Positions 1-64,000 of a stretch of DNA of 64,000 bases are shown piece after piece (positions within the stretch are counted from its first letter, which is position 1; each line of letters opens with the position of its first letter). The notes under the pieces are model-generated. The model had not been told where the DNA came from. It made no database searches and was given only the letters and a program-made list of their open reading frames with translations. The position numbers were made by a program, and so were the translations under genes. The stretch spans positions 124,001-188,000 of the IMG/VR virus record IMGVR_UViG_3300011113_000640; one strand, given 5' to 3'.

Positions 1-598
1 ATTCGGTATTTAAGAAACTGTTGTAGTAATTTCCACCATTAGGGTTGCCAGAATAGTACGGATTAGAAGGCCATTGGGTCCATCCAATGCCATCTGGACT
101 GCCTTGAGCACTGAGTTTGATGGTAGGTATGGTGAGTGGTGCACTGGGCACATACTGTGGTAAGATTGAATCCACAATGTTTACAGGGGCACGGGCACCG
201 GCCTGCGCATCCACAAACACAGCTTCCACAAGGTTACCACTGCTGCGTTGTATGCTGTAGTTGGCCGGTTGTGCCAAGACTTCTAGCAGTTCTGCACTGG
301 TCAAAGTTACCTTGGCGCGGCCGGTGGGAGCATTCAAGATCACCATGGGTTTTTCTATCAGCAATACATCACCTTCAGTGCTGATCACTCGGAACAGGAA
401 CGTGCTACCTGTGATGTTCACAGGTTTTTCTTGCTGGTTGATAAACTCAAACAAGAGCACGTTATCAACACCTTTGTTTATGGTCAGGACTTTGGCGTAC
501 ACAGGATCATACCTATAGATAAAAGTTTCGCCCGCGCCGGTGTCCATGAGCAAGACTCTGGTGATCTGCTGATAGATATAGGCTTGGGTGGAATACAT
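1..598 (-). CDS. Hypothetical phage protein, probably virion-associated (partial, runs off the window start)
   Basis: Not in the ORF track. Manual translation from ATG at 598 (MYSTQAYIYQQITRVLLMDTG...NKGVDNVLLFEFINQQEKPVNITG...) stays open to position 1. TAAATA lies 6 nt upstream. Confidence 0.8.
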   Translation of the reverse strand, partial: MYSTQAYIYQQITRVLLMDTGAGETFIYRYDPVYAKVLTINKGVDNVLLFEFINQQEKPVNITGSTFLFRVISTEGDVLLIEKPMVILNAPTGRAKVTLTSAELLEVLAQPANYSIQRSSGNLVEAVFVDAQAGARAPVNIVDSILPQYVPSAPLTIPTIKLSAQGSPDGIGWTQWPSNPYYSGNPNGGNYYNSFLNTE

Positions 599-658
599 AC
601 AGAGTATTTAGCAGGTTATGCTAGGGCTCAAAAACGGTCTGGTAAATATCCGTAACTT

Positions 659-1036
659 ATGAGCACTGAATTTTTTGCCCAACTAGCGGAAAAATATCCG
701 TTTATCACCTTGTGTGTGTATGCTACCACGGAATATGTGGGCATCATACAGAATCAAGACGATGCTATAACCACCATCTATGATTTTGGAGCCATACAAG
801 ATCTAGCAATCAAACGCAGATTTCTTGAGCTGGCCAACGTTTGGTGGTGGGAAAGCAATAGAACTGTGCCTATAAACATATTCTTGAAAGGTGAGTGGGA
901 CGTGTTCCGCCCCTATCTGCGTACATTTACCAACAAGGACCTGGAAATCCTGCACGGGCCCATATGCAGTCTCAGTGAAATGAGCCGCAAAAAAAGCAAG
1001 AGAAAAAGTATTACCTTAGTTCGGCGTGTTGAGTAG
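659..1036 (+). CDS. Hypothetical protein
   Basis: 125-aa ORF with TAAATA at 643-648; divergent from the preceding gene. Confidence 0.75.
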   Translation: MSTEFFAQLAEKYPFITLCVYATTEYVGIIQNQDDAITTIYDFGAIQDLAIKRRFLELANVWWWESNRTVPINIFLKGEWDVFRPYLRTFTNKDLEILHGPICSLSEMSRKKSKRKSITLVRRVE

Positions 1037-1585
1037 ATTCATGTGCAGGGCTACCAAGGCCGCATAACTAATCGCATGTGATTTCTTGAACACAAATCCT
1101 CGGCTGTCATCACCGTCCCACACTGAGGTAAACACTTGCTCCCAAGGCAGATTCTGTAGGTGTGCTTTGCCGGGTCTAATAATAGATATGAAAGCTGCCA
1201 TCCTAGGGATGCTGTCAGGGCGCATGGTTTTTAACAGTTCTGTATAGTTGCCCACGTGCACCAGTTGGCCTGCCCAATCCGAGTCGGTCCGTAGTCGCGA
1301 CCAAGGTGGTTCCAGGGCCAACATCGCTTCATAGTGTGATGGACTCTTTATCAGTTGATACACACTCATGTTCAGCAGATCGATCTTGAAATAACCCAAC
1401 TGTTCGGCTGTTTCGTAGTCTATGGCCGCACAGGCATTAACAGGATCCTGGGGTATGTCTGTGACATATATGCCACTGTTGTGACGACGCACCTGTCCTT
1501 GATTGATTTGTCGTGCTGGAACAGATTGTATCAATCGCAACAACTGATCTCTGTCAGCCAAGTCGATGTCAATGTCTGCGCTCAT
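1016..1585 (-). CDS. Minimal DNA polymerase III alpha (DnaE/family C) catalytic-core-like protein
   Basis: DnaE motifs in order (DIDID, HNSG, GYFKIDLL, RPG, FKKSHAISYA) within only 189 aa. Confidence 0.85.
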   Translation of the reverse strand: MSADIDIDLADRDQLLRLIQSVPARQINQGQVRRHNSGIYVTDIPQDPVNACAAIDYETAEQLGYFKIDLLNMSVYQLIKSPSHYEAMLALEPPWSRLRTDSDWAGQLVHVGNYTELLKTMRPDSIPRMAAFISIIRPGKAHLQNLPWEQVFTSVWDGDDSRGFVFKKSHAISYAALVALHMNLLNTPN

Positions 1586-2739
1586 TTTGAATATTTCCGC
1601 AAAATCTGATCAAGTTTCATTGGTCCTAGGGCTTCTATTGTGTTAGAAAAAAAGTAATTGTAGTTGTGTTCGACAAGATCTCGAGCCTGAGCACTGACCA
1701 AAATTTCAGGATGTTGGGCCATCCAGTTGATGGCCTCTGCACACATGCGATATCTTGCTATATGATCTTTTTCGTAATTATATGATTGTAACTGTTCTGG
1801 CAACAAATTCCAAGCAGTTTTAAATCCTAATTGGTTATACAACACGTCGGTGTTGGCCCCAGCAATGGGCCAAGGTATAGATTTAGTGATTGCACATTTA
1901 AGCAGTTTTTCAGTGATCCAGACTTCGTCATTTAACCATGTGGTTTCAGGAAATATCACACAATGATATGCAAGATATTCATCAATGACAAAGAAGCCCG
2001 GAGAAATTAATCCAAATTTTTGATCTATGCCAATTTGAATTGATCTATTATAATAGCCTTGAGTCTCTTGATCTATGTTGTCTTGATTGGCACAGTAATT
2101 ATTTACAAATTCTCTGAATTGGGTATCTTGTCTGGTTTCAAAAAAGCTGTCATTTAATTTTGATGCAGTGGTATAGTTATTTTGTCTTATAGTCATAGCA
2201 GTCCCCACAGTGGATTCTAATAGATCCATCATGTATTGACGCTGGGGTCTGTTCTGACCGTTGATATAGATCATGTTTTGCCTGCTGTTCTCAATTTTTT
2301 GATTGCTACGATCATAGTATTGTGGGTAAAACGGTCTTGTCAAGAAATCACGTGTGATCTGCGTGAATGGAAAAGGCAACAATTTGTCCGCACCAGGATA
2401 ACCGTCGACAACCAAGGCCGCAGTCAAAAAATAACAATTTTCTAATTCAACAAAAGCCCGATACATTTCTGGAGTGCAAACCTCAAGGTGATGTTGTCCT
2501 CCGTCAACAATTAAAAAGTCAAACTTGTCTGAGTTCACTGGATCCTTAGGCATGTGATAGAATCCAATATTGATGGCTCCAGCCTCCACTGACATGTTTT
2601 TACCAATTTTTATTTCACAATCAGCCCGATAATTATTGTGTTTATTCCTAGATTGATTGTATGCATAATAGTAATCAAACACCTGCAAGGATGAACTATT
2701 TTCTGAAGTATTATTGTCAAGGTGAACCAGTATTTTCAT
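1582..2739 (-). CDS. Putative glycosyltransferase-like protein (GT10-like ET...ITEK family)
   Basis: Motif FPET...WITEKLLK...GFKT; paralogous to 40147..41442; visibly AT-rich. Start placed at MKILVH. Confidence 0.5.
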   Translation of the reverse strand: MKILVHLDNNTSENSSSLQVFDYYYAYNQSRNKHNNYRADCEIKIGKNMSVEAGAINIGFYHMPKDPVNSDKFDFLIVDGGQHHLEVCTPEMYRAFVELENCYFLTAALVVDGYPGADKLLPFPFTQITRDFLTRPFYPQYYDRSNQKIENSRQNMIYINGQNRPQRQYMMDLLESTVGTAMTIRQNNYTTASKLNDSFFETRQDTQFREFVNNYCANQDNIDQETQGYYNRSIQIGIDQKFGLISPGFFVIDEYLAYHCVIFPETTWLNDEVWITEKLLKCAITKSIPWPIAGANTDVLYNQLGFKTAWNLLPEQLQSYNYEKDHIARYRMCAEAINWMAQHPEILVSAQARDLVEHNYNYFFSNTIEALGPMKLDQILRKYSK

Positions 2740-3862: not shown

Positions 3863-4362
3863 TACCAGGCCCGGTTATAATCTACTACTTCACAGTTTCT
3901 GCTGATGTCTTTGACAAAATACACACACTCAGGCTTTTCACCTTCGCCCACTGGCACACACAGCATCTGTCCATTTTTTAATTTTGGCGCATACCAAGTA
4001 ACCTCTTGATACACATCAATGATTTCAATGTCCAGGAAGCTGGGCCTAAAACTGCTCAAAGGATTGAACTGGAATGCCTTGAATCCACGATCATTGATGG
4101 CTGTCAAAGGTAGGACTTCTAGGTCACCCAAATCGGGTTCCCCGATCAAGATCTGCCAGTCCACGGGCATTTTGATACGATATTCACCTATGCGCAGAAC
4201 CAGGGCTGGTGCTGTAAAACTTTCTAGAAAGATCAAGGGTATGTAATGATAGTCTGGATCTTTAGGATCACTATTATCAAATATAGCAAAACGCATGTCG
4301 TCTACTTCTTCGGGTAGATGATCTAGTTCAAATGGCTCATTGTCCAGTGTTAATATTCTCAT
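3862..4362 (-). CDS. Hypothetical protein (possible degenerate Hint-like beta fold)
   Basis: 166-aa beta-rich ORF with its own sigma70-like promoter. Confidence 0.6.
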   Translation of the reverse strand: MRILTLDNEPFELDHLPEEVDDMRFAIFDNSDPKDPDYHYIPLIFLESFTAPALVLRIGEYRIKMPVDWQILIGEPDLGDLEVLPLTAINDRGFKAFQFNPLSSFRPSFLDIEIIDVYQEVTWYAPKLKNGQMLCVPVGEGEKPECVYFVKDISRNCEVVDYNRAW

Positions 4363-4368
4363 ACTTTG

Positions 4369-4396
4369 ATTATAACATATTTTGTGGCAAGTGCAA
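4369..4396 (-). promoter_or_regulatory. Sigma70-type promoter, probably leaderless transcript
   Basis: TTGCAC-N16-TATAAT with extended -10 TG; ATG 6 nt downstream. Confidence 0.65.
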
Positions 4397-4399
4397 CCT

Positions 4400-5873: not shown

Positions 5874-6689
5874 TTAAATTTTATAAATTATTTTTTTCAT
5901 ATCTAAACTTGTCAAAGGAAAAATATTTAATTGATCACATTGAATTTCAAATTTTTGTTCTCGCAGAAGATATTGAACATAAGACTCATCAAAAATCGTA
6001 ATACAAGGACTCGGATGATCAAATTGGCTGTTTAAAATTTGATCGACCCACTGCTGACACCTAATTTGTGAATTATGAAATTGTTGAGCTTTAATAAATT
6101 TTTTTTGATTGTTCATAATAGTATCAATATCTGCTGTTAATTTTTTATCAACAATCTTGGCGCATTCGACGAGTTTTTCAAAAATATTTTCAAATATATC
6201 TTGGGTATCTAGTTTAAAACTAGATTTAATTTGTTTGTAGCTATCGATAGTCTTCCAGACATCTACGATCCAAAAAGAAACCCATTCTCTCAAAATCCAT
6301 CTCGGGATATCTTCATTGAGTGTGTTAAATTTGTAGTCCCAATTTTGAGACAATTTTAACTTTATTTCAGCGTTAATAATTTGTGTTCGCAAATAGGAAA
6401 TCAAATTACTCTTCTCCCATTTGACAAATTGATTGTTATAATAGTCCAAGCAATGATCATGAACTGGTGTAATTGTTATTACAGTGTCCTGTTCTGTCAA
6501 TACTGTATCCTCACAATGTCCATACCAGATCAGTTTTTTTGATTCATGATCATCTCTAAACAAATGGCTGCTGCCATCGTCACAGAATTCAAAATTGGTT
6601 TCTCTGTGCGAGCTTAAATCAGTGTAATTGTACAAGCAACGGGAAAAATAAGTACCGTAGCATCCAGGAGGAAATAGTATTTTAATCAT
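5874..6689 (-). CDS. Hypothetical AT-rich protein (possible P-loop/sulfotransferase-like fold)
   Basis: N-terminal beta-strand followed by PPGCYGT; has its own overlapping promoters. Confidence 0.55.
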   Translation of the reverse strand: MIKILFPPGCYGTYFSRCLYNYTDLSSHRETNFEFCDDGSSHLFRDDHESKKLIWYGHCEDTVLTEQDTVITITPVHDHCLDYYNNQFVKWEKSNLISYLRTQIINAEIKLKLSQNWDYKFNTLNEDIPRWILREWVSFWIVDVWKTIDSYKQIKSSFKLDTQDIFENIFEKLVECAKIVDKKLTADIDTIMNNQKKFIKAQQFHNSQIRCQQWVDQILNSQFDHPSPCITIFDESYVQYLLREQKFEIQCDQLNIFPLTSLDMKKIIYKI

Positions 6690-6693
6690 TTGT

Positions 6694-6727
6694 TATTTAC
6701 TATAACACATTTGTAACAAAGATGCAA
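6694..6727 (-). promoter_or_regulatory. Overlapping sigma70-type and late TAAATA promoters
   Basis: TTGCAT-N17-TATAGT overlapping TAAATA (6694-6699), 4 nt from the ATG. Confidence 0.55.
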
Positions 6728-9448: not shown

Positions 9449-10266
9449 AATCCTGATTCAATTTCTTTTACTGTGTATTCAGTATGACAAATTTCCGTCA
9501 ACCATTGGTCTCTATCCACTGTGTATGGTCGTTCAATATCATCTAGTTGTATGCTGACTGGATGAGCCAAGCTAGAGGAGTCTACTATAGGCCTGGTGCC
9601 GGCTAAAGCTGCTTGTATGCCCGGACCAGAATTGTAGTTGACCAAGGCATGACAGTCAAATGCCAAGTTGTAGCTGTCATAGGTATTGGCTACCCGTACA
9701 GGTTTTTCTATGACCACGTCCAAGGGCAAATGTACCAAGCCAGCCCAGTTCAACGGACTTCTGGGATGAGGGCGCACCACAATAGGACGATCCGTGACTT
9801 TGCGTAGTCGTTCTACTTGTTGAACTACCCAGCCTTCTATGCTGACCAGACCCACCGCCTGCTGACTGCGGGCATGTTGCGCCGCTATCACAATCCTAGG
9901 GTTACGACTTAGATTCACGGCCAGGCTTATACCCAGCTTTCTGGGCCGATCCCAATCCAAGTTTTCTGTGTGTCCATAGTATCCGTTGGCCGTTACGGAG
10001 TTCAAGGCAATCTTCCAGGTTTCTCCACGATACAAGGCACCTACATCAATGATTATCACAGGTTTGCCCGCGGATCTATATTGCGACCATACTGACTGGT
10101 TGGCGGCCATGCGTCCGGACCACAGCACACTCCATATGATAACTGCGTCGGCGTCCAGACTATTGGGTTCAACTGTGTGCCCTGCACTACGTAGACTGGT
10201 CAGCACGGCCTGCAACGCAGGACCGCTGTTTTGAGCACACTGATTTGGAAAGTAGGCCACACGCAT
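9424..10266 (-). CDS. Capsule polysaccharide biosynthesis-like protein (KpsC/KpsS-like GT-B)
   Basis: VVRPHP and NYNSGPGIQAALAG motifs. Confidence 0.6.
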   Translation of the reverse strand: MRVAYFPNQCAQNSGPALQAVLTSLRSAGHTVEPNSLDADAVIIWSVLWSGRMAANQSVWSQYRSAGKPVIIIDVGALYRGETWKIALNSVTANGYYGHTENLDWDRPRKLGISLAVNLSRNPRIVIAAQHARSQQAVGLVSIEGWVVQQVERLRKVTDRPIVVRPHPRSPLNWAGLVHLPLDVVIEKPVRVANTYDSYNLAFDCHALVNYNSGPGIQAALAGTRPIVDSSSLAHPVSIQLDDIERPYTVDRDQWLTEICHTEYTVKEIESGLWIQRLGL

Positions 10267-10268
10267 AA

Positions 10269-10284
10269 GGTTAAATATTTAACC
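10269..10284. promoter_or_regulatory. Palindromic bidirectional late promoter
   Basis: Perfect palindrome GGTTAAATATTTAACC, carrying TAAATA on both strands, between divergent ATGs at 10266 and 10285. Confidence 0.75.
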
Positions 10285-11073
10285 ATGAATCTACTACCCT
10301 TGCAAGGAAACCTGGATCAAGATCGATTCTTCGTGTTTGCAGCCGCAGACACTGTGTATTTTGATTTACATGCTAGACCATTGATCAACAGCATCATGAC
10401 CAATGTTCCTGACCTAGGCATTCACATACACATCTATGATCCTAGGCCAGATCAAATTGATTTCTGTCGGTCACGTGCCGGAGTGACCTGCACGCATGAA
10501 ACCTTGGACGACATGAGTTTTCAACAAGCCGCCGATTATTGGATGACTCGAACTGTGTTTTCCAACGAGCGTCAACAGCAAATGTATAAAAAAGGGCAAA
10601 AACTGGGTCGTGGTGAACTGTTGCGATTGATACGGCAGACCTACTATGCCTGTGGTAGATTTGTGAGATTGGCAGAATTGTTGCGACCCGGACAACGATG
10701 CTTGAGCATTGATGTTGATGGTCTGGTTCGCCAGCCGTTTGAACATCAACTTGGTGCCCAGGATTTTTATCTGTACGAGAAACCCAAAGACGGCACGCAC
10801 CTTGCTGGCGCTATCCTTTTCAATGGCACCGCAGGATCACATGAGTTCCTACAAGAATATGCACGACAGTTGCGTGCAAGCATGACCGAAGACGACCTAT
10901 ATTGGTTCTTGGATCAGTTCGTCCTGGATCAGTTGGTAAAACAGTATCGCACGGGCCACCTGCCCATGAGCTACATTGACTGGGCCATGCGCCCAGAAAG
11001 CGCCATATGGTCGGCCAAGGGTCCACGCAAAGAATTAGAAATATTCAAAAATGAACAAAGAAAATACATCTGA
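10285..11073 (+). CDS. Putative nucleotide-diphospho-sugar transferase (GT-A)
   Basis: SIDVD (DxD), LAGAILF and WFLDQ motifs; start reassigned to 10285. Confidence 0.6.
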   Translation: MNLLPLQGNLDQDRFFVFAAADTVYFDLHARPLINSIMTNVPDLGIHIHIYDPRPDQIDFCRSRAGVTCTHETLDDMSFQQAADYWMTRTVFSNERQQQMYKKGQKLGRGELLRLIRQTYYACGRFVRLAELLRPGQRCLSIDVDGLVRQPFEHQLGAQDFYLYEKPKDGTHLAGAILFNGTAGSHEFLQEYARQLRASMTEDDLYWFLDQFVLDQLVKQYRTGHLPMSYIDWAMRPESAIWSAKGPRKELEIFKNEQRKYI

Positions 11074-14418: not shown

Positions 14419-15170
14419 AGCCTTACTATGTCTTCTTCGTCGCAACTATTACCATACTGAATTTCTACAATTTTCAAAGGCTGGTCTGTGGTATTACGCA
14501 ACTGATGCCATTGGCCTGGGTCTACCCAAAAATGTTCATGACGCCGTAGTTCATCTACAAACACAGGATCTCGAGCCAGTTTCATGGTATATACACTGCC
14601 TTGTCCTTCGCTGACTATCCAAAATTCGCTGCGATGATCATGATACTGCATGCTGATACTTTGTCCAGGATTCAGCGTGAGCTCTTTGACTTTGATTCCC
14701 GGCACTTCATGCAACACACGATAATAACCCCAGACACGTTCAGTTTTAGGAGCTTTCCACTCTTCAAGTATCCATGAACTGGAGTTGGCTTTGTCTTGGC
14801 CCCCGACTCCAAACACAAACTCTACACCTGGCACTGTCATTTCTGGAATGTTGTCCTTGGTGCGGTCACCACCATTGGCAAATATGATACGTGCATGTGG
14901 ATAGTGTGCGCGGACCTGTTGCAATAAGTGACAAGCAGTTCCATCCTCATCGTCAAAGGTATAGACTTCATCTACGGGTTTCAAGTTATTGAGTACCGCC
15001 AGGCGCTCAGTCCAGGGCATGAATGAACGACCTTTTTTACGGGCCAACCACTCGTCGCTGTTGATGCCCACAATCAGCTGGTCGCCCAGCATCCTGGCTG
15101 CTTTGATCAGTCGGATATGTCCAGAATGTACCGGATCAAATCCACCGCTTACTACCACTATAGTCGTCAT
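14415..15170 (-). CDS. Cytidylyltransferase-like (HxGH) fused to a mannose-6-phosphate isomerase type II cupin
   Basis: SGGFDPVHSGH and FANGGDR; C-terminal WGYY...SMQYH..RSEFW...EIQYG. Canonical TATAAATA lies 5 nt upstream of ATG 15170. Confidence 0.85.
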   Translation of the reverse strand: MTTIVVVSGGFDPVHSGHIRLIKAARMLGDQLIVGINSDEWLARKKGRSFMPWTERLAVLNNLKPVDEVYTFDDEDGTACHLLQQVRAHYPHARIIFANGGDRTKDNIPEMTVPGVEFVFGVGGQDKANSSSWILEEWKAPKTERVWGYYRVLHEVPGIKVKELTLNPGQSISMQYHDHRSEFWIVSEGQGSVYTMKLARDPVFVDELRRHEHFWVDPGQWHQLRNTTDQPLKIVEIQYGNSCDEEDIVRL

Positions 15171-15202
15171 GCGGATATTTATATGCCGTTTATGGCCCGA
15201 AT

Positions 15203-26601: not shown

Positions 26602-26614
26602 AATATACTATTTA

Positions 26615-33031: not shown

Positions 33032-33034
33032 GAC

Positions 33035-41445: not shown

Positions 41446-41970
41446 TTACTTTAACTCCTTTACGTTTAAGTGTCGGAGTGTGGCCTGCAACATGTCAATC
41501 TGTCTACGGCAGTCTTCGAGTGCATGATGGCTGGTAGGAGGCTTGGGCAGGCCGGGCCACAGGCTGTACACCGTCCTGGCGTCACGCACATTGTAGAACT
41601 GCCAAGGCAGGCTTTTGCCATAGCTCTTGTAGGCATGTTCCAAGATGTTCATGTCATAGGTAGGACCATTGGCCCAAATAAACTTGTGTTGCCAGGCCAG
41701 TTTGTAAAGACTGTCCAAGGCCTTGTCCAAGGGCACCCGTCCTTCTTCGCAGAATGCTTCTGCCTGTGCTTCTTTCTGCGTTGACCACCACTGTACTGTG
41801 CCATCTTCTATGGCACGAGTTTCTTGACTTTCAAGGGTAATACGAGCATAGTAGCAACGATCATAGTAGCCTGTGCCAAATGGATCAAAACTCTGTGCCG
41901 CAATGGTCAAAATAGTGGCATCCGGGCCAGTGGCCAGGCCTTCTATGTCGATCATCAAGGAAGTGCTCAT
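41446..41970 (-). CDS. DEDDh 3'-5' exonuclease (Rv2179c-like)
   Basis: MIDIEGL, WANG..YD, RDART and HHALED motifs. Confidence 0.85.
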   Translation of the reverse strand: MSTSLMIDIEGLATGPDATILTIAAQSFDPFGTGYYDRCYYARITLESQETRAIEDGTVQWWSTQKEAQAEAFCEEGRVPLDKALDSLYKLAWQHKFIWANGPTYDMNILEHAYKSYGKSLPWQFYNVRDARTVYSLWPGLPKPPTSHHALEDCRRQIDMLQATLRHLNVKELK

Positions 41971-41976
41971 GCTGAT

Positions 41977-42005
41977 AGTATAACATGAATTTTGATATTA
42001 GTCTA
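41977..42005 (-). promoter_or_regulatory. Sigma70-type promoter, probably leaderless
   Basis: TAGACT-N17-TATACT with extended -10; ATG 6 nt downstream. Confidence 0.7.
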
Positions 42006-43095: not shown

Positions 43096-44533
43096 TTATC
43101 AATGTTTCCAATAAAAAATGATTGTCAAGATTATCTGCCACTGTGTAACCTAATTCGCGACTGACTGCGTTTAATTCTTTGACCCATTTGGCCCGTACCG
43201 CCGGAGTGCTATCAATTGACTCATTGATCCATAAACTAGGTTGTGATCCAATTATACGCACTCCCAACTCTTCTTTGTTCTCGTCAAGATAGGTATTTGG
43301 AAATATTCCCAATGTTCCGCCCCATTGTATTACCAAAATGTCTCGATATTCAACGTGGTCACGCAACCACTGTTTTATAAAATCTATGTCTTTTTCGGTT
43401 TCGTTGACATACCCAACAATATTTAATAACAACAATCCAATGTTGTTTTTTTTGGCCTGGGCCAAATGAAAATCAATGGCTTCGTTGGAAAACTTTTTAC
43501 CAATTTCATATCTGATGTGTTGATTTAGATTTTCAATTCCCACTGCAAGTTTTTCGGCCCCACTTAATCGCAACAGATCCCATTCACGCTCAGATGCAGT
43601 GCTGACATTCCTAAAAATATAATAGCCAGACCACCTAAACTTGACTTCAGACTTTTGATTGAAATCTGCCAAAAGTTCTAGTAGTCTCATAAACTCTTTT
43701 TGATTTCCGTTGGTCAAAGAATCCTGGAATTTGAAAGTGCTGATATTGTATCTTTGGTATTGCGCCAGCATTTCGTTAAAAATATCGTCGGCGGTTCTCC
43801 ATTGAAACCGTTTCCAATTGGCGATGTAATCACAAAATTTACACTGTCTCACACAACCTCGACTGCCAATCAACGGCATAACCTTTTTGTCGTACACATC
43901 AAAAATATAATCATCATAATTGGGCATAGGCAAAGATCGCAGTTCGTCTTTGCTGAGCTCTTGCCATTCCAATGAATTTATTCCTGCATAGTTGGAGTTG
44001 CCAATCAACAACTCATATAGACTGTTTTCGCCATCGCCCCTGACATGATAATCAAAAAATTTAAGCCGCAACATGTCATCTATGTATTGAGATTTACCTG
44101 TGAATGTTGCTAGGCAACCAGCGCCGCCTACAATAATTTTAACGTCAGGATCTAATTTTTTGATATAATATGCCATCCATTTTGCTGAGTGTTGGCACAC
44201 ATAACTAAACAAGCTGAGTGCCACAAACTTTGGTGACCAACTCAAGATCTGCTTGGCTGCGCTGATAAAGATTTGTCTAAGCACCTCACTGGTTTCTGGA
44301 TCAGCATGCCCATCAAAGAAAAATCGTATCAATTGTTCTTTTTGAGGATGATTGCCGACGTACTGATAAATTTCAACGTTTAAATCCACAGCTAAACAAC
44401 TATGCCCAGATTTTTCAATTATGGGTTTTAGAGCCGCAGGAGCCATTAAAGGTATAGAACTGTCAGTCCAAGGAACTGTGCATATCACTACATCTTTATG
44501 ATTTGAATTAGGATTGTCAAGGCATTGCCACAT
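43088..44533 (-). CDS. B12-binding radical SAM enzyme (class B methyltransferase-like)
   Basis: IIVGGAG, VRGDGE and SRGCVRQCKFC motifs; start reassigned to MWQCLD at 44533. Confidence 0.85.
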   Translation of the reverse strand: MWQCLDNPNSNHKDVVICTVPWTDSSIPLMAPAALKPIIEKSGHSCLAVDLNVEIYQYVGNHPQKEQLIRFFFDGHADPETSEVLRQIFISAAKQILSWSPKFVALSLFSYVCQHSAKWMAYYIKKLDPDVKIIVGGAGCLATFTGKSQYIDDMLRLKFFDYHVRGDGENSLYELLIGNSNYAGINSLEWQELSKDELRSLPMPNYDDYIFDVYDKKVMPLIGSRGCVRQCKFCDYIANWKRFQWRTADDIFNEMLAQYQRYNISTFKFQDSLTNGNQKEFMRLLELLADFNQKSEVKFRWSGYYIFRNVSTASEREWDLLRLSGAEKLAVGIENLNQHIRYEIGKKFSNEAIDFHLAQAKKNNIGLLLLNIVGYVNETEKDIDFIKQWLRDHVEYRDILVIQWGGTLGIFPNTYLDENKEELGVRIIGSQPSLWINESIDSTPAVRAKWVKELNAVSRELGYTVADNLDNHFLLETLINV

Positions 44534-44539
44534 TAAATC

Positions 44540-44568
44540 AGTGTAACAAAGTTTATTAAAAAAGTCAA
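44540..44568 (-). promoter_or_regulatory. Sigma70-type promoter, probably leaderless
   Basis: TTGACT-N17-TACACT with extended -10; ATG 6 nt downstream. Confidence 0.7.
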
Positions 44569-44574
44569 TGATTA

Positions 44575-46553: not shown

Positions 46554-47704
46554 TAATGAGCCCTCAATATAATTAAATTTTCGTTTCCGCGACCGTTGAA
46601 CTTGGTTTCTGTGGCTCGGATATCTTTAAACACCTTGCGGGCCGCGGGTTTTCCGCCTGACAATAGTTCTTTTAACTGCTCTGCAGGCTTGCGTAGCGTT
46701 TTCTGCACGGTTTGCATGGTATCAAAGCCCACAATGGCTGATCCTTTGACGCTGAAGGTTCCAAGATGAGCATCGGCCATGACATGGATCAACTTGCGTT
46801 TTTTGGTGTCGTACAACCAGGCTTCGCCAGCACCCACCAATTGTGCTGGTGCTATGCTGGTCAGTTTGAGTTCGGTAAAGTCTTTCATGTACTTGAATTT
46901 AGCTGACAACTTCTCAGGGCTCACTGTTTTCTTGGCTCTGGGTTTGCGTTCAACTTTTTTGATCTGCACATAGTTGCCACAGTCGGCTATGACCTGTTCA
47001 ATGAACTTGATGCATTGTTTGATTTGATTTTTGTTTAGGTGGCTGTAACCTTCCGCCAGATCCGCATCGGTGCCTTCTAAAACTTCTTCAAACTCGGCCA
47101 ACTTGCGTTTCCACACATCAGCGATCGTGCCCACCATGTTAGGGCTGATGTTCATGCCACGGATCTGTGCAATGGGTTTCCAGTCTGCGCTCATCTTGGC
47201 ACCAGCGGCAATGAAATCATCGAACATGCCTTCCAGTTCGCCGGCACACTCTGATACCTTTTCACGCAGGTGATCCTGTATGGTGAGTTTGGCCACTGCG
47301 GATTCTGCGGCCACTTCGTCCTTGTCACGGCGCACTTCTTGTTTTACTTTGAGCATGTTGGCAATCTGTTCGTCGATGATGCATTGTTCATGCTCGTTGA
47401 GTTGTAGTCCTACCAAGGTCATCCTACACACCCAGGCCGGTGTGAGTCGAATTTGGCTGTCAGGAATGCCTCGCATGAGTTTGGCATCCTTGGGTCTGTG
47501 ATTGACGTCCAGGTACTGGCACAGCATGTCTTTGGCATCTTTTTTACCATAGTGATAATTATACCAGGCAAAAGCCTTGCTGAATGCACTGATGCGATTT
47601 TCTTCTGTGGGTTGGAATTTCCAGTCAGGCTCGTGCCCAACATATTTGGTTTCTGCGCCTTTGGGATTCAAGGGTTTGATCACTGTAGCGGCTCGTGCAT
47701 TCAT
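46553..47704 (-). CDS. Hypothetical early protein
   Basis: 383 aa with SD AGGAG and a sigma70 promoter. Confidence 0.75.
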   Translation of the reverse strand: MNARAATVIKPLNPKGAETKYVGHEPDWKFQPTEENRISAFSKAFAWYNYHYGKKDAKDMLCQYLDVNHRPKDAKLMRGIPDSQIRLTPAWVCRMTLVGLQLNEHEQCIIDEQIANMLKVKQEVRRDKDEVAAESAVAKLTIQDHLREKVSECAGELEGMFDDFIAAGAKMSADWKPIAQIRGMNISPNMVGTIADVWKRKLAEFEEVLEGTDADLAEGYSHLNKNQIKQCIKFIEQVIADCGNYVQIKKVERKPRAKKTVSPEKLSAKFKYMKDFTELKLTSIAPAQLVGAGEAWLYDTKKRKLIHVMADAHLGTFSVKGSAIVGFDTMQTVQKTLRKPAEQLKELLSGGKPAARKVFKDIRATETKFNGRGNENLIILRAH

Positions 47705-47728
47705 GGGCTCTCCTGAGTGTAAAACATA

Positions 47729-47757
47729 ATTATAGCATTTTAGGTATTTTTGGTCAA
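47729..47757 (-). promoter_or_regulatory. Sigma70 early promoter
   Basis: TTGACC-N17-TATAAT with extended -10; the -35 overlaps the upstream stop codon. Confidence 0.85.
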
Positions 47758-48008
47758 CCGCCTAAAAGTGCCGCAAAAGTAAGGTGTTGCTCTAGATTTG
47801 TGATCAGGTCTTCAGCTTGCTGGATCAGCTCTTTGTAGTGATTAGTTTCTCGGTGAAGTCTACGGCACTCCACGCTTTCCATGTCTGCGGCCACCATGGC
47901 CGAGTCTATGGTTCTGACCATTTTCAGCAGATCCTTACGGGCCACTTTGTTTTGGATCGTGGCAATTTGACGTTCTGCACGATCCAGGCGTTGATACAAT
48001 TCTTCCAT
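47754..48008 (-). CDS. Small helical hypothetical protein
   Basis: Start reassigned to MEELYQ at 48008; TTGACC-N17-TATACT (48044-48016) ends 7 nt upstream. Confidence 0.65.
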   Translation of the reverse strand: MEELYQRLDRAERQIATIQNKVARKDLLKMVRTIDSAMVAADMESVECRRLHRETNHYKELIQQAEDLITNLEQHLTFAALLGG

Positions 48009-48074
48009 GAGTTTAAGTATACTATAAGTTGATTTAACGGTCAATCTGGAATTATGAACATAAATATCTATACT

Positions 48075-48659
48075 ATGTTTTATGTATATACCTATTTAAG
48101 AGAAGACGGCTCCCCGTATTATGTTGGCAAGGGTAGTGGAGATCGTGCCTACAAAAAATGGAATAAAAAAGACATTAAACCACCAAAAGATCAAACTCGT
48201 ATTATTATAGTAGAAGATAATTTAGATGAACAATCTGCATTTGATTTAGAAATTAAATTGATTGCCCAATATGGACGCAAAGATTTAGGCACAGGCATAC
48301 TACACAACAAAACAAACGGAGGTGAAGGATCGTCTGGGCATAAAATAGGTGGATGGCAATGGAGTGCAGAATCTAGAGAAAAACGCAAAGGTGCCGGCAA
48401 TCCAGCGTTTGGAAAAGAACAGAGTGTAGAAATTATACAGAAAAAAGTAGAAAGCTGGCTTAAGACCACTGGAGGTAAGCAAAATCCAGAATGGATAGAA
48501 AAACGTGCTAATGCTAGAAGGGGTAAAAAACAACCAGAGGGCACCGGAGAGAAAATTGCTGCAAAATTAAGAGGTAGAAAACAATCACCAGAGGCAGTAG
48601 CTAAACGAGCGGAGTCGTGTAGGTTATCGTGGGCTGGTAAAAAAGCACTAAATATTTGA
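48075..48659 (+). mobile_element. Free-standing GIY-YIG homing endonuclease with NUMOD3-like repeats
   Basis: FYVY...YYVGKG..R, E..LI..YGR and NKTNGGEG; basic C-terminal repeats (NPAFGK, RGKKQ, RGRKQS); A-rich composition. Confidence 0.85.
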
Positions 48660-48661
48660 CT

Positions 48662-50005
48662 ATGCCAAGACTCTCGTTATATAGGCCTAATAGAACGGCC
48701 GATTATCAATATCTAGACAAAATAATCTCAGAACAATATACAGTGGGAGGCCTTGACCTTTTCGTACATAAGTATCTTGGGCCACAAGGTGCTGGACAAG
48801 ACAATGGCAACAATGATGCTACCCTGCCCAACTATCCTTCAACCGATCCGCTTTTTATCCAAGACCTATTATTGTTGGAAAATCGCGATCGAGTATATGC
48901 TCCTGATGTGTTTGTCATGCGTGGTGTGTATCGCACACAAGACATAGATTTTGATCTCACCCAGTTTGGCTTGTTTTTAAACGGTGACACTTTGTTCATC
49001 ACCTTCCACTACAACGACATGATTGACACGTTTGGCCGCAAACTCATGAGTGGTGATGTCATAGAAGTGCCCAACCTTAGAGATTACCATCCCTTGGACA
49101 CTACCTTGGTCAAAAGCCTGGCTAGATACTATGTGATCCAGGATGCCAACTTTGCTTCAGAAGGATTTAGTCAGACCTGGCAACCTCATTTATGGCGTAT
49201 CAAAGCCACGCCCATGGTCAATGCTCAAGAATTCAGTCAGATCATTGATCAGCCGTTCATGCCGGAAAACATCTGGGACCCAGGCAATTTTTATCCTGCC
49301 AACGAAATTGTCAACAACGGTGGCACATACTACCGGGCCACGCAAAATGTTCCACCGGGCACTGACATAACGAATACCGCTTACTGGCAAGTGGTCACTC
49401 CTGACACCGTGGGTGACAAGCAAAGCACCAGACCCAAGGATCTGGCTCTCAATGATGCTATCCTGGCACAAAGCTACGAAGAGGTACCACTCAGTGGCTA
49501 TGACAATGTGAAGTTTTATATATTGCCCACACAAGACGGAGAACCTGGACAGTATGGTATCACTACAACCACCGACGGTCCTGACTCAGCTGGTGGGCAA
49601 CCTGCCTTGGATCAAACACCCACTGGATTTGGCTATGCCAGTGGTTATCTTACTGGTAGCACCCATGCACTCAATGGCCTGCCAGTTACGCCTGGAGTTC
49701 AGTTTCCTCCAAATCCGGCCTCTGGTGCCTACTGTTTACGTTTGGATTATTTCCCCAACCGCTTGTTTCGTTACAATGGACGTGCCTGGATTGCCATTTC
49801 AGACAATGTGAGAACGGATCTTGATTATGCCACCCAGGCGCTGACACAACGAGCCAGCTTTGTGAACAACACATATACTGTGCCCACCACAGACCTTGGC
49901 AACATTCCAAGCCGTCAGAGTTTAAGTAAGATTTTAGAAATCCAGCCCGACAACGGCGACCAAGGTGGTAATCTTCCACCCAATCCTAGACCCCCAGGAC
50001 GATAA
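48662..50005 (+). CDS. Neck/head-closure protein (gp14-like)
   Basis: DLLLLENRDR, LTQFGLFL and GDVIEVP motifs; precedes the gp15-like gene. Confidence 0.65.
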   Translation: MPRLSLYRPNRTADYQYLDKIISEQYTVGGLDLFVHKYLGPQGAGQDNGNNDATLPNYPSTDPLFIQDLLLLENRDRVYAPDVFVMRGVYRTQDIDFDLTQFGLFLNGDTLFITFHYNDMIDTFGRKLMSGDVIEVPNLRDYHPLDTTLVKSLARYYVIQDANFASEGFSQTWQPHLWRIKATPMVNAQEFSQIIDQPFMPENIWDPGNFYPANEIVNNGGTYYRATQNVPPGTDITNTAYWQVVTPDTVGDKQSTRPKDLALNDAILAQSYEEVPLSGYDNVKFYILPTQDGEPGQYGITTTTDGPDSAGGQPALDQTPTGFGYASGYLTGSTHALNGLPVTPGVQFPPNPASGAYCLRLDYFPNRLFRYNGRAWIAISDNVRTDLDYATQALTQRASFVNNTYTVPTTDLGNIPSRQSLSKILEIQPDNGDQGGNLPPNPRPPGR

Positions 50006-62839: not shown

Positions 62840-62849
62840 TTTTGTTTTC

Positions 62850-62925
62850 TCCTTAAAGAAGCCCAATGCGAGTTCTAGTCGCTACGCGGTGGGGTTAATC
62901 ACCGCATAAAACGCAGGATTGCGTT
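62850..62925 (-). promoter_or_regulatory. Structured 5' leader (three hairpins), candidate cis-regulatory RNA
   Basis: AACGCA/TGCGTT, TATGCGGTG/CACCGCGTA and GCGA/TCGC stems between TAAATA and the SD. Confidence 0.55.
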
Positions 62926-62984
62926 GACAAGTATTTATGGCAAGGCAAATATTTTAGGTCAGTACATACAAATTAAATAGAACC

Positions 62985-64000
62985 ATGCATACAGAAGAAC
63001 TCATAGCGTTAGGCAATCAAGCCCGAGAAGACAACAATCCAGAATTGGCCTTGCAGTACTATGTGCAGGCCTTGACTCAAGATCGCAATTCGGCAAGTGC
63101 ATTCAACAACTATGGCAATGTTTTGAGAGAGTGCGGTGATCCTGCGGGTGCCATACCTTTCTTGCAACGAAGCATAACTTTGGCTCCAGAGCATCCCACT
63201 GCGCAATTCAATTTGGCTGTGGCCTACTTGCTCATGGGCGACTACGAGCGCGGTTGGCCACAGTACGAAACACGCTGGAACTACGAACACCTGGCTGGCA
63301 CGTTGCCCAATTACACACAACCGCGTTGGACTGGACAAGATGTCCGAGACAAAACTGTGTTGATCATGGGCGAGCAAGGTCACGGTGACAACATACAGTT
63401 TGTGAGATTTGTTGAGGATATTAAAACCCGCGGCGCCCGAGTTATCTTGGCAGTCAGCGCCAGCCTCAAACCCTTGTTGCAGGGAGAGGCCATACCCGAC
63501 ATTGTTTGCCCGGGCGACGCCTTGCCAGAGTTTGATTATTGGATTCCCATAATGAGCATACCTGCTGTAGTGGGTAGCACCTTGGAAAATCTTGCTCCTG
63601 TGCAGTATTATCTCACAGCCGACACAGCATTACAACGTACCTGGCAACAACGCCTGGGACCAAAAACTCGCTTGCGTGTGGGCTTCTGTTGGTCGGGCCG
63701 CAGAGACACCTGGATCAATCGTCACAAAGGCATGCCTTTTGCAACCATGTTAGAACTGATAAAAAGAAATCCCACGTATGAATGGGTCAATCTGCAGTGC
63801 GATTGTACCCCTGAAGAAGAAGAAGCCCTGGTAGCTGCAGGAGTCACAGCTTATCCAGGTAGCATACAGAGCTTTGCAGATTCAGCGGCCTTGCTCATGC
63901 ACATGGATGTAGTCTTGAGTGTGGACACCGCTGTGGCGCACCTGGCCGGTGCATTGGGCAGACCTGTGTGGGTCATGCTGAGTCAATATGCTTTGGATTG
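62985..64000 (+). CDS. TPR-domain + GT-B (GT9-like) glycosyltransferase (partial, runs off the window end)
   Basis: Not in the ORF track. Manual translation gives MHTEELIALGNQ...AFNNYGNVLRE (TPR), EQGHGDNIQFVRF and VDTAVAHLAGALGRPVW; TAAATA 5 nt upstream. Confidence 0.85.
   Translation, partial: MHTEELIALGNQAREDNNPELALQYYVQALTQDRNSASAFNNYGNVLRECGDPAGAIPFLQRSITLAPEHPTAQFNLAVAYLLMGDYERGWPQYETRWNYEHLAGTLPNYTQPRWTGQDVRDKTVLIMGEQGHGDNIQFVRFVEDIKTRGARVILAVSASLKPLLQGEAIPDIVCPGDALPEFDYWIPIMSIPAVVGSTLENLAPVQYYLTADTALQRTWQQRLGPKTRLRVGFCWSGRRDTWINRHKGMPFATMLELIKRNPTYEWVNLQCDCTPEEEEALVAAGVTAYPGSIQSFADSAALLMHMDVVLSVDTAVAHLAGALGRPVWVMLSQYALD

What the first reader, a model, noticed from the sequence alone, without database searches (positions are those of the whole stretch)
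598..62985. Pervasive leaderless gene architecture under both late and sigma70 promoters
Seen: a TAAATA (once TAAGTA) hexamer ends only 4-10 nt before the ATG at starts 598, 659, 6689, 10266, 10285, 15170, 21631, 23207, 26601, 33031, 39193, 48075, 48662 and 62985. Sigma70-type -35/-10 pairs end 6-7 nt before the ATG at 4362, 41970, 44533 and 48008. None leaves room for a Shine-Dalgarno in the transcript. Sheath, tube, long fibre and ATPase genes instead have longer SD-led leaders. Known: the T4 late promoter is TATAAATA, with initiation a few nt downstream. Inference: about 18 genes are translated from leaderless or near-leaderless mRNA, a two-tier translation scheme unusual for T4-like phages and a possible clue to the host.
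Basis: partly seen in the sequence, partly recalled or inferred. Interest (0 to 1): 0.75.

Follow-up and report, generated by a model that had tools for sequence, protein, structure and literature searches.

The report
Leaderless genes in freshwater jumbo phage
In this 320-kb uncultured freshwater jumbo phage and its many relatives, roughly one gene in seven has a promoter set directly against its ATG, so the mRNA should start at or within a few bases of the start codon with no ribosome-binding leader; T4 and the nearest cultured relatives do not show this layout.

Summary
All 18 sites read back exactly. Genome-wide, 38 of 159 TAAATA hexamers end 4-10 nt before an ATG that opens a long ORF; shuffles give about 1. 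TATAAT ends 5-7 nt before such an ATG 13 times, against 0.5 expected. Motif and spacing are conserved in dozens of diverged IMG/VR relatives while the flanks drift. The same peak occurs in two other near-complete family genomes. It is absent in T4, PA5oct and GAP32, where the late box lies 16-45 nt upstream.

A gp55-like late sigma is encoded outside the window. SD-led late promoters carry an A at the 5th base after TAAATA, which is where the A of the ATG sits in the tightest class. After close-set motifs the start codon is always ATG, never GTG or TTG.

The best reading is leaderless or near-leaderless mRNAs (0-5 nt) from both phage late promoters and host sigma70-type promoters, alongside canonical AAGGAG-led genes. 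No RNA 5' ends could be obtained.

The host-clue idea is not supported: a beta-type permuted tmRNA, canonical SD and sigma70 consensus suggest a proteobacterial host. The family also encodes IF1, bS21 and an initiator-like tRNA.

The parts
596..610 (-). Late-type TAAATA (605-610), 6-nt gap, ATG at 598; 389-aa gene running leftwards out of the window
   Evidence: GCTAAATAY-N4-ish-ATG conserved in 48 distinct relatives
643..661 (+). Late-type TAAATA (643-648), 10-nt gap, ATG at 659 (125 aa, phrog_11637); divergent partner of 598 across a 60-bp spacer
   Evidence: GGTAAATATC conserved in 46 distinct relatives
4360..4397 (-). Sigma70-type TTGCAC-N17-(TG)-TATAAT (4369-4374), 6-nt gap, ATG at 4362 (166 aa, phrog_11279)
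   Evidence: -35, extended -10 and 6-nt spacing conserved in 70 distinct relatives while the 6 spacer bases vary
6687..6727 (-). Terminator hairpin and T-run, then TTGCAT-N17-TATAGT (6699-6704, gap 9) overlapping TAAATA (6694-6699, gap 4), ATG at 6689 (271 aa)
   Evidence: three relatives have terminator + TTGACT-N17-TATAAT/TACTAT-like box + 6-7 nt + ATG
10264..10287 (.). Divergent ATGs at 10266 (-) and 10285 (+), only 18 nt apart, sharing the palindrome GGTTAAATATTTAACC with TAAATA on both strands (10276-10281 and 10272-10277)
   Evidence: the 18-nt spacer is identical in 4 relatives whose proteins are 57-77% identical
15168..15181 (-). TATAAATA-type box (TAAATA 15176-15181), 5-nt gap, ATG at 15170 (251 aa; cytidylyltransferase-like plus cupin/mannose-6-P isomerase domains)
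   Evidence: ATAAATAYCYGC-ATG conserved in relatives down to 57% identity
21629..21644 (-). TAAATA (21639-21644, its TAA is the terminase stop codon), 7-nt gap with A at the 5th base, ATG at 21631 (598-aa virion structural protein)
   Evidence: conserved in more than 20 distinct relatives
23205..23220 (-). TAAGTA (23215-23220), 7-nt gap, ATG at 23207 of the large terminase. This is the weakest site: the motif lies in the upstream radical-SAM ORF, which ends in an ATGA overlap
   Evidence: relatives show TAAGTA, CATAAATTA, TAAATA, SD+GTG, or no motif at all
26599..26614 (-). TAAATA (26609-26614), 7-nt gap, ATG at 26601 (538-aa virion structural protein, phrog_1645)
   Evidence: some relatives keep it, others start this gene by TAATG overlap with the preceding small ORF
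33029..33041 (-). GGTAAATA (33036-33041), 4-nt gap, ATG at 33031 (165 aa)
   Evidence: conserved in about 20 distinct relatives, while a few have an SD-led version instead
39182..39195 (+). CTAAATA (39182-39187), 5-nt gap, ATG at 39193 (HNH endonuclease-like, 115 aa), preceded by a conserved palindrome
   Evidence: 55 distinct relatives
41968..42005 (-). TAGACT-N17-(TG)-TATACT (41977-41982), 6-nt gap, ATG at 41970 (174-aa exonuclease)
   Evidence: TGCTATAAT plus 5-6 nt plus ATG in 61 distinct relatives
44531..44568 (-). TTGACT-N17-(TG)-TACACT (44540-44545), 6-nt gap, ATG at 44533; ORF without relatives in a 39% GC stretch
   Evidence: start not verifiable by comparison
48006..48044 (-). TTGACC-N17-TATACT (48016-48021), 7-nt gap, ATG at 48008 (84 aa)
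   Evidence: TTGACY-N17-TATAAT plus 6-7 nt plus ATG in 41 distinct relatives
48061..48077 (+). ATAAATA (48061-48066), 8-nt gap, ATG at 48075 (homing-endonuclease-like, 194 aa) inserted between the divergent pair 48008/48662
   Evidence: present in only one relative (L167)
48649..48664 (+). CTAAATA (48649-48654), 7-nt gap with A at the 5th base, ATG at 48662 (447-aa virion structural protein)
   Evidence: CCATAAATAC-NNN-ACT-ATG in 39 distinct relatives
62974..62987 (+). TTAAATA (62974-62979), 5-nt gap, ATG at 62985 (381 aa, runs out of the window)
39091..39126 (-). Contrast class: late TAAATA (39121-39126), 27-nt gap holding AAAGAGGAA, ATG at 39093 (tail sheath). Similar SD-led late leaders sit at 35689, 32512, 45345 and 53597
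47702..47757 (-). Contrast class: TTGACC-N17-TATAAT, leader of about 24 nt with AGGAG, ATG at 47704

Best explanation
The window belongs to a 320.5-kb uncultured freshwater jumbo phage of the T4 superfamily. By large terminase its nearest isolate is Pseudomonas phage PA5oct, at 53% identity. Its genes use two promoter types. One is a -10-only late box with core TAAATA, read by RNA polymerase carrying the phage's gp55-like sigma. The other is an ordinary TTGACA/TATAAT promoter read by host sigma70.

Each type occurs in two layouts. In one layout a 15-30 nt leader carries a canonical AAGGAG-type Shine-Dalgarno sequence. In the other the promoter abuts the ORF, so the inferred start of transcription falls on the A of the ATG (TAAATA gap 4-5, TATAAT gap 5-6) or 2-6 nt before it (gap 6-10). 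This gives leaderless or near-leaderless mRNAs. Such mRNAs must be translated by the SD-independent route, in which the 5'-terminal AUG is bound by 70S ribosomes or 30S-IF2-fMet-tRNA.

About 13 late-type and 4 sigma70-type genes in the window are built this way. Genome-wide the figure is roughly 50-55 (about one gene in seven).

Shown: the motifs, their spacing, the statistics, the conservation, the sigma gene and the ATG-only rule. Inferred: the transcription start positions and the mode of translation.
For: 1. Enrichment and sharp spacing: 38/159 TAAATA at gap 4-10 (modes 4, 5, 7) against about 1 in shuffles; 13/181 TATAAT at gap 5-7 against 0.5, and none at gap 8-10.

2. Two unrelated promoter types are both placed so that the canonical +1 falls on the ATG. 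The T4 late box spans -13 to -6 (PMC2988020), so gap 5 puts +1 on the A. For sigma70 the 7th base after the -10 hexamer is +1, so gap 6 puts +1 on the A.

3. In SD-led late promoters of three family genomes the 5th base after TAAATA is A in 68% (n=76), and in the gap-7 class in 83%. In the gap-4 class that base is the A of the ATG.

4. A gp55-like sigma lies at G000:208222-209124 (phrog_12791 3e-73, phrog_234 7e-24). No other Sigma70_r2 protein is encoded.

5. Motif and spacing are conserved in 39-70 distinct orthologous loci per site while spacer and flanks vary. Protein alignments begin at residue 1.

6. Close-set motifs are followed by ATG 38 times, GTG 0 and TTG 0. Relatives that start the terminase with GTG have an SD instead.

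7. Divergent ATG pairs lie 18 nt (10266/10285) and about 60 nt (598/659; 48008/48662 in relatives) apart, and 6689 follows directly after a terminator. These leave no room for a leader.

8. TAAATA is the only non-SD hexamer among the top-enriched hexamers 4-8 nt before first ATGs in this genome, G001 and G002. It is not among them in T4, PA5oct or GAP32.
Against: No RNA 5' end was seen. The single metatranscriptome with related words gave only short contigs of diverged relatives.

T4-type helpers gp33 and gp45 were not detected, so the late machinery differs from T4 and its start-site geometry is assumed, not known.

About 11 of the 38 sites lie within 20 nt of the end of an upstream same-strand ORF. 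Read-through transcripts with coupling or 70S scanning could therefore contribute to their translation.

The gap 7-10 sites would carry 3-6 nt leaders, which in E. coli translate less well than a 5'-terminal AUG.

Generic sigma70-like matches in the region are no more frequent than in shuffles (27 vs 23.1). Only their position and conservation carry weight.
Confidence: 0.8

Rival explanations
1. TAAATA next to the ATG acts at the RNA level as an SD-independent ribosome-binding or enhancer element (A/U-rich, S1- or phage-bS21-dependent) within longer, mostly polycistronic transcripts. It would then not be a promoter.
For: The element is A/U-rich and sits where an RBS would. The phage encodes bS21 and IF1. 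Most genes lie in long same-strand arrays.
Against: The same hexamer recurs 16-25 nt upstream of genes that have their own SD, with an A at +5. It matches the T4-family late box, and a gp55-like sigma is present. An independent class with full -35/-10 sigma70 elements occupies the same position relative to the ATG. Composition-matched A/T hexamers are not enriched. Divergent pairs use the motif on both strands.
Confidence: 0.07
2. The genes are translated mainly by termination-reinitiation or 70S scanning from the upstream cistron. The close-set motifs would then be weak or auxiliary internal promoters of little consequence for translation.
For: About 11 of 38 sites are within 20 nt of an upstream ORF end. 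At 21631 the motif's TAA is the terminase stop. The terminase itself overlaps the upstream ORF by ATGA, and many relatives have no motif there.
Against: Most sites (27 of 38) have no upstream same-strand ORF end nearby or are divergent. Sites following terminators or facing another gene head-to-head cannot be coupled. Motif conservation is as strict at uncoupled sites.
Confidence: 0.08
3. Artefact: chance co-occurrence, or true starts lie further downstream behind an SD.
For: Start codons were inferred from sequence only. Several small ORFs (10266, 10285, 44533) have no family hits.
Against: There is a 30-fold excess over shuffles. Orthologue alignments reach residue 1 with synonymous variation right after the ATG. 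The same peak occurs in two other genomes and in 1 Mb of family loci.
Confidence: 0.02

Closest known systems
Thermus thermophilus phage phiYS40 (middle/late leaderless mRNAs)
   Same: A large lytic myovirus in which most middle and late transcripts lack a leader, so phage translation relies on SD-independent initiation. Infection is reported to raise IF2 and lower IF3 (as summarised in PMC3594737).
   Different: The host is a Deinococcus-Thermus bacterium, where leaderless mRNAs are common. phiYS40 has different promoters and no gp55-type sigma. Here only about 15% of genes are affected, SD-led genes coexist with them, and the phage itself encodes IF1.
T4 late transcription (gp55 sigma, TATAAATA box at -13 to -6)
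   Same: A -10-only A/T box with the same core, a gp55-family sigma, and late structural genes downstream.
   Different: T4 places the box 16-35 nt before the ATG (0 of 32 at gap 4-10) with SD-led leaders. Here the conserved core is 6-7 bp, the sigma is 300 aa instead of 185, and no gp33 or T4-type gp45 is detectable.
Rak2-like / PA5oct group jumbo phages (CBB, GAP32, PA5oct)
   Same: Nearest cultured relatives by terminase (43-53%). ATAAATA is a predicted late motif, with a gp55-like sigma and no gp33/gp45 (PMC5259590). PA5oct also has bS21 and an initiator-like tRNA.
   Different: Their late motifs sit 16-45 nt upstream, and only 1-3 ATAAATA fall at gap 4-10. They have no IF1. Only SD-type hexamers are enriched before their starts.
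Classical bacterial and phage leaderless mRNAs (lambda cI from PRM; actinobacterial and Deinococcus lmRNAs)
   Same: The -10 element lies about 6-7 nt before an AUG, there is no SD, and AUG is required (review PMC9031893).
   Different: In Proteobacteria these are isolated cases. Here it is a systematic, conserved design used by two promoter classes in one phage lineage.
Translation genes of huge phages (IF1, IF3, bS21, S1, tmRNA; Al-Shayeb et al. 2020, PMC7162821)
   Same: This phage carries IF1, bS21, tRNAs and a tmRNA, like many huge phages.
   Different: That work links S1 to absent SD motifs but does not mention leaderless mRNAs. Here a concrete mRNA class that such factors could favour is visible.

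Membership tests
T4-type late transcription system | gp55-family late sigma encoded by the phage | tested here: met
   G000:208222-209124 (-), 300 aa: phrog_12791 3e-73, phrog_234 (the T4 gp55 family) 7e-24
T4-type late transcription system | -10-only TATAAATA-like box upstream of late (structural) genes, with no conserved -35 | tested here: met
   TAAATA core before sheath, structural and other genes. The six bases upstream show no strong conservation. The core is shorter than T4's 8 bp.
T4-type late transcription system | gp33 co-activator | tested here: not met
   phrog_254 finds nothing at E<=1 in the 93%-complete genome
T4-type late transcription system | gp45-type sliding clamp as activator | tested here: not met
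   phrog_223 finds nothing at E<=1. A divergent clamp cannot be excluded.
T4-type late transcription system | Transcription starts about 6 nt after the box | not testable with these tools
   No RNA 5' ends. Indirect support only: A enriched at the 5th base after the motif.
Leaderless mRNA (lmRNA) | Primary 5' end at, or within about 5 nt of, the start codon | not testable with these tools
   Inferred from promoter geometry only
Leaderless mRNA (lmRNA) | No Shine-Dalgarno sequence available in the transcript | tested here: met
   4-10 nt between motif and ATG. No GGAG/GAGG/AGGA/AAGG core at any window site.
Leaderless mRNA (lmRNA) | Strong preference for AUG as start codon | tested here: met
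   ATG 38, GTG 0, TTG 0 after TAAATA at gap 4-10. In family loci the counts are 180 vs 4 and 3.
Leaderless mRNA (lmRNA) | Translation by 70S or IF2-dependent 5'-AUG recognition | not testable with these tools
   Needs biochemistry
phiYS40-like phage strategy | Shift of host initiation-factor balance in favour of lmRNA | not testable with these tools
   Only gene content is known: phage IF1 present, no IF3_C and no MazF-like gene

The most novel reading that the evidence does not exclude
This freshwater jumbo-phage lineage has coupled its gp55-type late programme (and part of its early programme) to leaderless translation. It supplies its own initiation components (IF1, bS21 and an initiator-like tRNA with C1xA72) to bias host ribosomes toward 5'-terminal AUGs. 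This would create a phage-private translation channel that stays open when SD-dependent host translation is shut down. IF1 is present in all three family genomes that show the leaderless peak and absent in T4, PA5oct and GAP32, which lack it.
Probability: 0.2. Interest if true: 0.85.

Novelty: new variant of a known kind. Interest (0 to 1): 0.62.

Why it matters
Leaderless mRNAs are regarded as rare exceptions in Proteobacteria and their phages. Here they appear as a conserved design principle in hundreds of uncultured T4-superfamily jumbo phages, used by both host-sigma and phage-sigma promoters.

If confirmed, this has three consequences:
- It gives a concrete substrate for the long-puzzling translation-initiation genes of huge phages (IF1, bS21, initiator tRNA).
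- It shows that gp55-type late promoters can drive leaderless genes.
- It warns that gene callers relying on SD motifs will misplace starts in these genomes.

It also yields very compact promoter-ATG cassettes (about 15-40 bp) that could be tested as portable expression elements.

Tried and rejected
1. RNA evidence. Two run searches found DNA holders in lake and freshwater metagenomes and one metatranscriptome with 5% of the words. Laying it on 21001-27000 gave only 150-275-nt contigs of 80-90% relatives and no 5' ends.

2. Stop-codon artefact (TAA of the upstream gene followed by ATA). Rejected: it applies to only 2 of 38 sites, and other TAA-hexamers are not enriched.

3. Generic A/T richness. 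Rejected by the permutation control and the hexamer-enrichment scan.

4. Terminators directly upstream as a general proof. My scan found them at only 4 of 47 sites, plus 6689 by eye, so this helps only locally.

5. Host from bS21. A genome-contig scan gave mixed hits: Burkholderiales/Neisseriaceae full-length at 55-58%, Gemmatimonadota partial, and one probably mis-binned contig. Inconclusive.

6. MazF-like, IF3 and extra sigma70-family genes. None found.

7. A conserved leaderless 8-codon uORF before bS21. It is present in one subclade, but another subclade replaces the ATG and strengthens the SD, so the conservation may be that of a leader. Left open.

8. The PA5oct, phiKZ and AR9 transcriptome papers were read for precedent. 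None reports leaderless phage mRNAs: phiKZ none, AR9 UTRs of 26-491 nt.

9. The crude in-house gene caller covers only 88% of the genome, so genome-wide gene fractions are approximate.

Full report
**What the window is.** The 64-kb window is bases 124001-188000 of a single 320,541-bp linear virus record, 45.9% GC and 93% complete by CheckV. It carries the T4-superfamily morphogenesis and replication core: large terminase, tail sheath, tube, UvsX-like recombinase, gp32-like SSB, helicase and several virion structural proteins. The nearest isolates by large terminase are Pseudomonas jumbo phage PA5oct (52.7% aa), Sinorhizobium phage Phosso, Agrobacterium phage Atu_ph07 and the Rak2/GAP32 group at 43-44%. 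DNA-level matches to known phages are negligible. The sequence comes from freshwater and lake viromes. It has hundreds of IMG/VR relatives: 321 terminase hits at 76-96% aa and 455-599 hits for two other genes.

**Checking the observation.** Every one of the 18 sites reads back as described, and exact motif coordinates and gaps were verified by script. Genome-wide there are only 159 TAAATA on both strands. Of these, 38 end 4-10 nt before an ATG opening an ORF of at least 60 codons. That compares with 1.1-1.3 in dinucleotide-preserving shuffles (maximum 6) and 3-12 for same-composition hexamers that do not overlap the motif.

The distance distribution is bimodal. There is a sharp cluster at 4, 5 and 7 nt, almost nothing at 11-15, and a second cluster at 16-25 nt that corresponds to short SD-containing leaders. 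For TATAAT, 13 of 181 copies end 5-7 nt before such an ATG (0.5 expected), none at 8-10 and one at 12-14. The variant TAAGTA gives 7 of 59 at gap 4-7. The motif's TAA is the stop codon of an upstream long ORF in only 2 of 38 cases, so this is not a by-product of tight gene packing.

**Controls in other phages.** I pulled the whole genomes of T4, PA5oct and GAP32 and ran the identical script.
- In T4, none of the 32 TATAAATA lies 4-10 nt before an ORF-opening ATG, and 21 lie at 16-35 nt.
- In PA5oct and GAP32, ATAAATA clusters at 16-45 nt, with 3 and 1 at 4-10 nt.
- Two other near-complete genomes of the freshwater family (G001, 344 kb with terminal repeats; G002, 317 kb) show the same extra peak. 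TAAATA at gap 4-10 gives 36 and 29, and TATAAT at gap 6 gives 9 and 10.

A motif-agnostic scan asked which hexamers are most enriched ending 4-8 nt before first ATGs. In T4, PA5oct and GAP32 it returns only SD-type words. In this genome, G001 and G002 it returns SD-type words plus TAAATA at 33-39-fold. In about 1 Mb of family loci around the terminase, 180 of 551 TAAATA sit at gap 4, 5 or 7 before an ORF-opening ATG.

**Comparative anatomy.** For each site I projected orthologous starts by tblastn of the first 70 residues and read the upstream DNA. The protein alignments reach residue 1. The bases after the ATG vary synonymously. The motif and its distance are kept, while the few spacer bases and everything upstream drift.

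Examples:

| Site | Conserved layout | Distinct relatives |
|---|---|---|
| 598 | GCTAAATAY..TGT-ATG | 48 |
| 659 | GGTAAATATC | 46 |
| 15170 | ATAAATAYCYGC-ATG | down to 57% identity |
| 21631 | (A/C)TAAATA-N4-ACT-ATG | more than 20 |
| 33031 | GGTAAATA-N4-ATG | about 20 |
| 39193 | CTAAATA-N5-ATG | 55 |
| 48662 | CCATAAATAC-N3-ACT-ATG | 39 |
| 4362 | TTGCA-N17-TGTTATAAT-N6-ATG | 70 |
| 41970 | TGCTATAAT-N5/6-ATG | 61 |
| 48008 | TTGACY-N17-TATAAT-N6/7-ATG | 41 |

The last three rows are the sigma70-type sites.

Three geometries leave no room for a leader.
- The ATGs at 10266 and 10285 face away from each other across only 18 nt, which form a palindrome with TAAATA on both strands. That spacer is identical in four relatives whose proteins are only 57-77% identical.
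- The pairs 598/659 and, in most relatives, 48008/48662 share spacers of about 60 bp that hold two back-to-back promoters.
- Site 6689 follows a hairpin and T-run terminator directly.

The SD-led tier is conserved just as well. The sheath (39093), 35689, 32512, 45345 and 53597 have TAAATA followed by 17-27 nt containing AGGA/GGAG. Site 47704 has TATAAT followed by about 24 nt with AGGAG. The gp32-like gene has AAAGG.

**Why these are promoters and where transcription should start.** The genome encodes one gp55-family sigma, at G000:208222-209124 and outside the window. It scores phrog_12791 3e-73 and the T4 gp55 family phrog_234 7e-24. There is no other Sigma70_r2 protein. The TAAATA box is therefore most simply its target, and the TTGACA/TATAAT promoters are the host's.

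The T4 late box occupies -13 to -6 (Geiduschek and Kassavetis 2010, PMC2988020). A 5-nt gap after TAAATA therefore puts +1 on the A of the ATG. An internal signal supports this geometry. In 76 SD-led late promoters of the three genomes, the 5th base after TAAATA is A in 68%, against about 30% at neighbouring positions. In the 23 gap-7 sites it is A in 83%. In the 24 gap-4 sites that base is the A of the ATG. In the 31 gap-5 sites the ATG's A is the 6th base and the 5th is a pyrimidine.

For sigma70 promoters the usual +1 is the 7th base after the hexamer, which is the A of the ATG at gap 6, the modal value. A tool scan independently lists the pairs at 48044-48016, 44568-44540 and 42005-41977. 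Such matches as a class are no commoner than in shuffles (27 vs 23.1), so position and conservation carry the argument, not the match itself.

Finally, the start codon after a close-set TAAATA is ATG in 38 cases and GTG or TTG in none. In relatives where the terminase starts with GTG there is an SD instead. That is the known codon preference of leaderless initiation (PMC9031893).

**Extent.** My crude Markov gene caller found 322 genes over 88% of the genome. Among them, 30 late-type and about 15 sigma70-type starts are of this kind. About half of the called genes have a recognisable SD core. With the ORF-based count (38 TAAATA, up to 7 TAAGTA, 13 TATAAT), roughly 50-55 genes, about one in seven, are predicted to be leaderless or near-leaderless.

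The products are mixed: virion structural proteins (21631, 26601, 48662), a sugar-nucleotide enzyme (15170), HNH and homing endonucleases (39193, 48075), an exonuclease (41970) and many unknowns. I see no clean functional split from the SD-led tier.

**Weak points among the 18.**
- The TAAGTA before the terminase lies inside the radical-SAM ORF, whose stop overlaps the terminase ATG. Relatives show TAAGTA, CATAAATTA, TAAATA, an SD with GTG, or nothing. Coupling may suffice there.
- Site 26601 is motif-led in some relatives and TAATG-coupled in others.
- Site 44533 lies in a 39% GC stretch with no relatives.
- Sites with gaps of 7-10 nt should give 3-6 nt leaders.

**The host-clue inference.** Evidence points away from a leaderless-rich host. 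The phage's other genes use canonical AAGGAG at about 8 nt, and strong TTGACA/TATAAT promoters. It carries a permuted tmRNA that matches Rfam beta_tmRNA (RF01850) full-length at 129 bits against a gathering score of 84, as do G001 and G002. Its bS21 aligns full-length best to Burkholderiales and Neisseriaceae, although that scan was inconclusive. All cultured relatives infect Proteobacteria. In P. aeruginosa only 55 genes were called leaderless by dRNA-seq, and phage phiKZ had none (PMC8244752). The architecture therefore looks like a lineage-specific phage strategy.

**Translation genes.** Outside the window the genome encodes several initiation-related components.
- A bona fide IF1: 72 aa, PF01176 at 70.7 bits, TTG start behind GAGGAG.
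- A bS21: 73 aa, PF01165 at 60 bits.
- Seven tRNAs, including an initiator-like tRNA-Met with the C1xA72 mismatch and a CGCGGG...CCCGCAACCA acceptor stem, but without the canonical three G:C pairs at 29-31/39-41.

IF1 is present in all three family genomes and absent from T4, PA5oct and GAP32. bS21 and an initiator-like tRNA are also in PA5oct. A review of lmRNA translation states that IF1 and IF2 stimulate it, IF3 inhibits it, and extra fMet-tRNA strongly enhances it (PMC9031893). Huge phages are known to carry IF1, IF3, S21 and tmRNA, but leaderless mRNAs are not mentioned in that context (PMC7162821). With three genomes against three, the IF1 association is only a lead.

**Comparison with what is known.** Leaderless mRNAs are established in lambda cI, Actinobacteria, Deinococcus-Thermus and archaea. 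The closest phage precedent is Thermus phage phiYS40, whose middle and late mRNAs are mostly leaderless and whose infection shifts IF2 and IF3 (PMC3594737). ATAAATA late motifs with a gp55-like sigma and no gp33/gp45 have been predicted in CBB and GAP32 (PMC5259590). I likewise find no gp33 or T4-type gp45 here. In my searches I found no report of gp55-type late promoters abutting start codons, or of a systematic leaderless tier in a T4-superfamily or proteobacterial jumbo phage. I therefore rate it a new variant of a known kind.

**Verdict.** The leaderless reading is well supported by spacing, two promoter classes, the +5 A, the ATG-only rule, strong conservation and outgroup contrast, but it lacks direct 5'-end data. 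The host inference is not supported. Confidence in the main explanation is about 0.8.

Noticed in passing
outside window: G000:C1:34490-34708 (-) = L209:1495-1713: Phage-encoded translation initiation factor IF1 (72 aa, PF01176 70.7 bits), with a TTG start behind GAGGAG. It is present in family genomes G001 and G002 and absent from T4, PA5oct and GAP32.
   Followed up: partly
outside window: G000:C1:89418-89639 (-) = L210:1465-1683, plus 30 nt upstream: Phage bS21 (73 aa, GTG start). Upstream, GGTAAATAC-N4-ATG opens an 8-codon ORF (MTLLQENS) whose TGA overlaps the bS21 start. This is conserved in 22 distinct relatives, but another subclade has no ATG there and a stronger SD. In more distant phages bS21 itself starts 4-5 nt after TAAATA.
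   Followed up: partly
outside window: G000:C1:275959-276032 (-): Initiator-like tRNA-Met with the C1xA72 mismatch and an E. coli-like acceptor stem, but lacking the canonical three G:C pairs next to the anticodon loop. G001 has an orthologue, and PA5oct also has an initiator-like tRNA.
   Followed up: partly
outside window: G000:C1:277980-278305 (-) = L304:9980-10305: Permuted (two-piece) tmRNA matching Rfam beta_tmRNA RF01850 at 129 bits, with tag ANAANDEVFALAA by ARAGORN. It is conserved in G001 and G002 and suggests a betaproteobacterial host.
   Followed up: partly
window 45346-45369 (-): The late leader of gene 45345 folds into a hairpin (GGAAC-ACGGA-GTTCC) that presents the GGAG of the SD in or at the loop. 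Relatives keep the stem through compensatory changes (e.g. GCAAT..GTTGC, GGGAAC..GTCCC, TATAAAC..GTTTATA).
   Followed up: no
window about 26600-28600 (-): A run of small ORFs whose products end in a shared motif (SP-V/I-K-x-F-K/R-G-Y-P/G-R), each stop overlapping the next ATG (TAATG or GATAATG). The encoded AAAGGA also serves as an SD-like element for the next gene.
   Followed up: no
window 48054-48659 (+) and 39193-39540 (+): A homing-endonuclease-like ORF is inserted between the divergent pair 48008/48662 and is present in only one relative. An HNH endonuclease ORF lies next to the sheath gene. Both carry their own close-set TAAATA.
   Followed up: partly
window 40000-44700: A low-GC stretch (39% against 46% average) with ORFs (42029-42676, 42664-43095, 43088-44638) that have no relatives in 80 family loci and no PHROG hits. 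It is probably an accessory island.
   Followed up: no
window 23204-24331 (-): A radical-SAM domain protein is encoded immediately upstream of, and overlapping (ATGA), the large terminase gene.
   Followed up: no
window 55694-61264 (-); outside window G000:C1:220883-235648 (+): Very long ORFs of 1,856 aa and 4,922 aa. The first has only a weak C-terminal PHROG hit shared with the 368-aa tail-like protein at 52491-53597.
   Followed up: no
window 4400-5857 (-): The replicative helicase gene has no SD and no recognisable promoter within 48 nt in this genome. Some relatives place TATACT or TACAAT 6 nt before its ATG, which is the sigma70-type leaderless layout.
   Followed up: no
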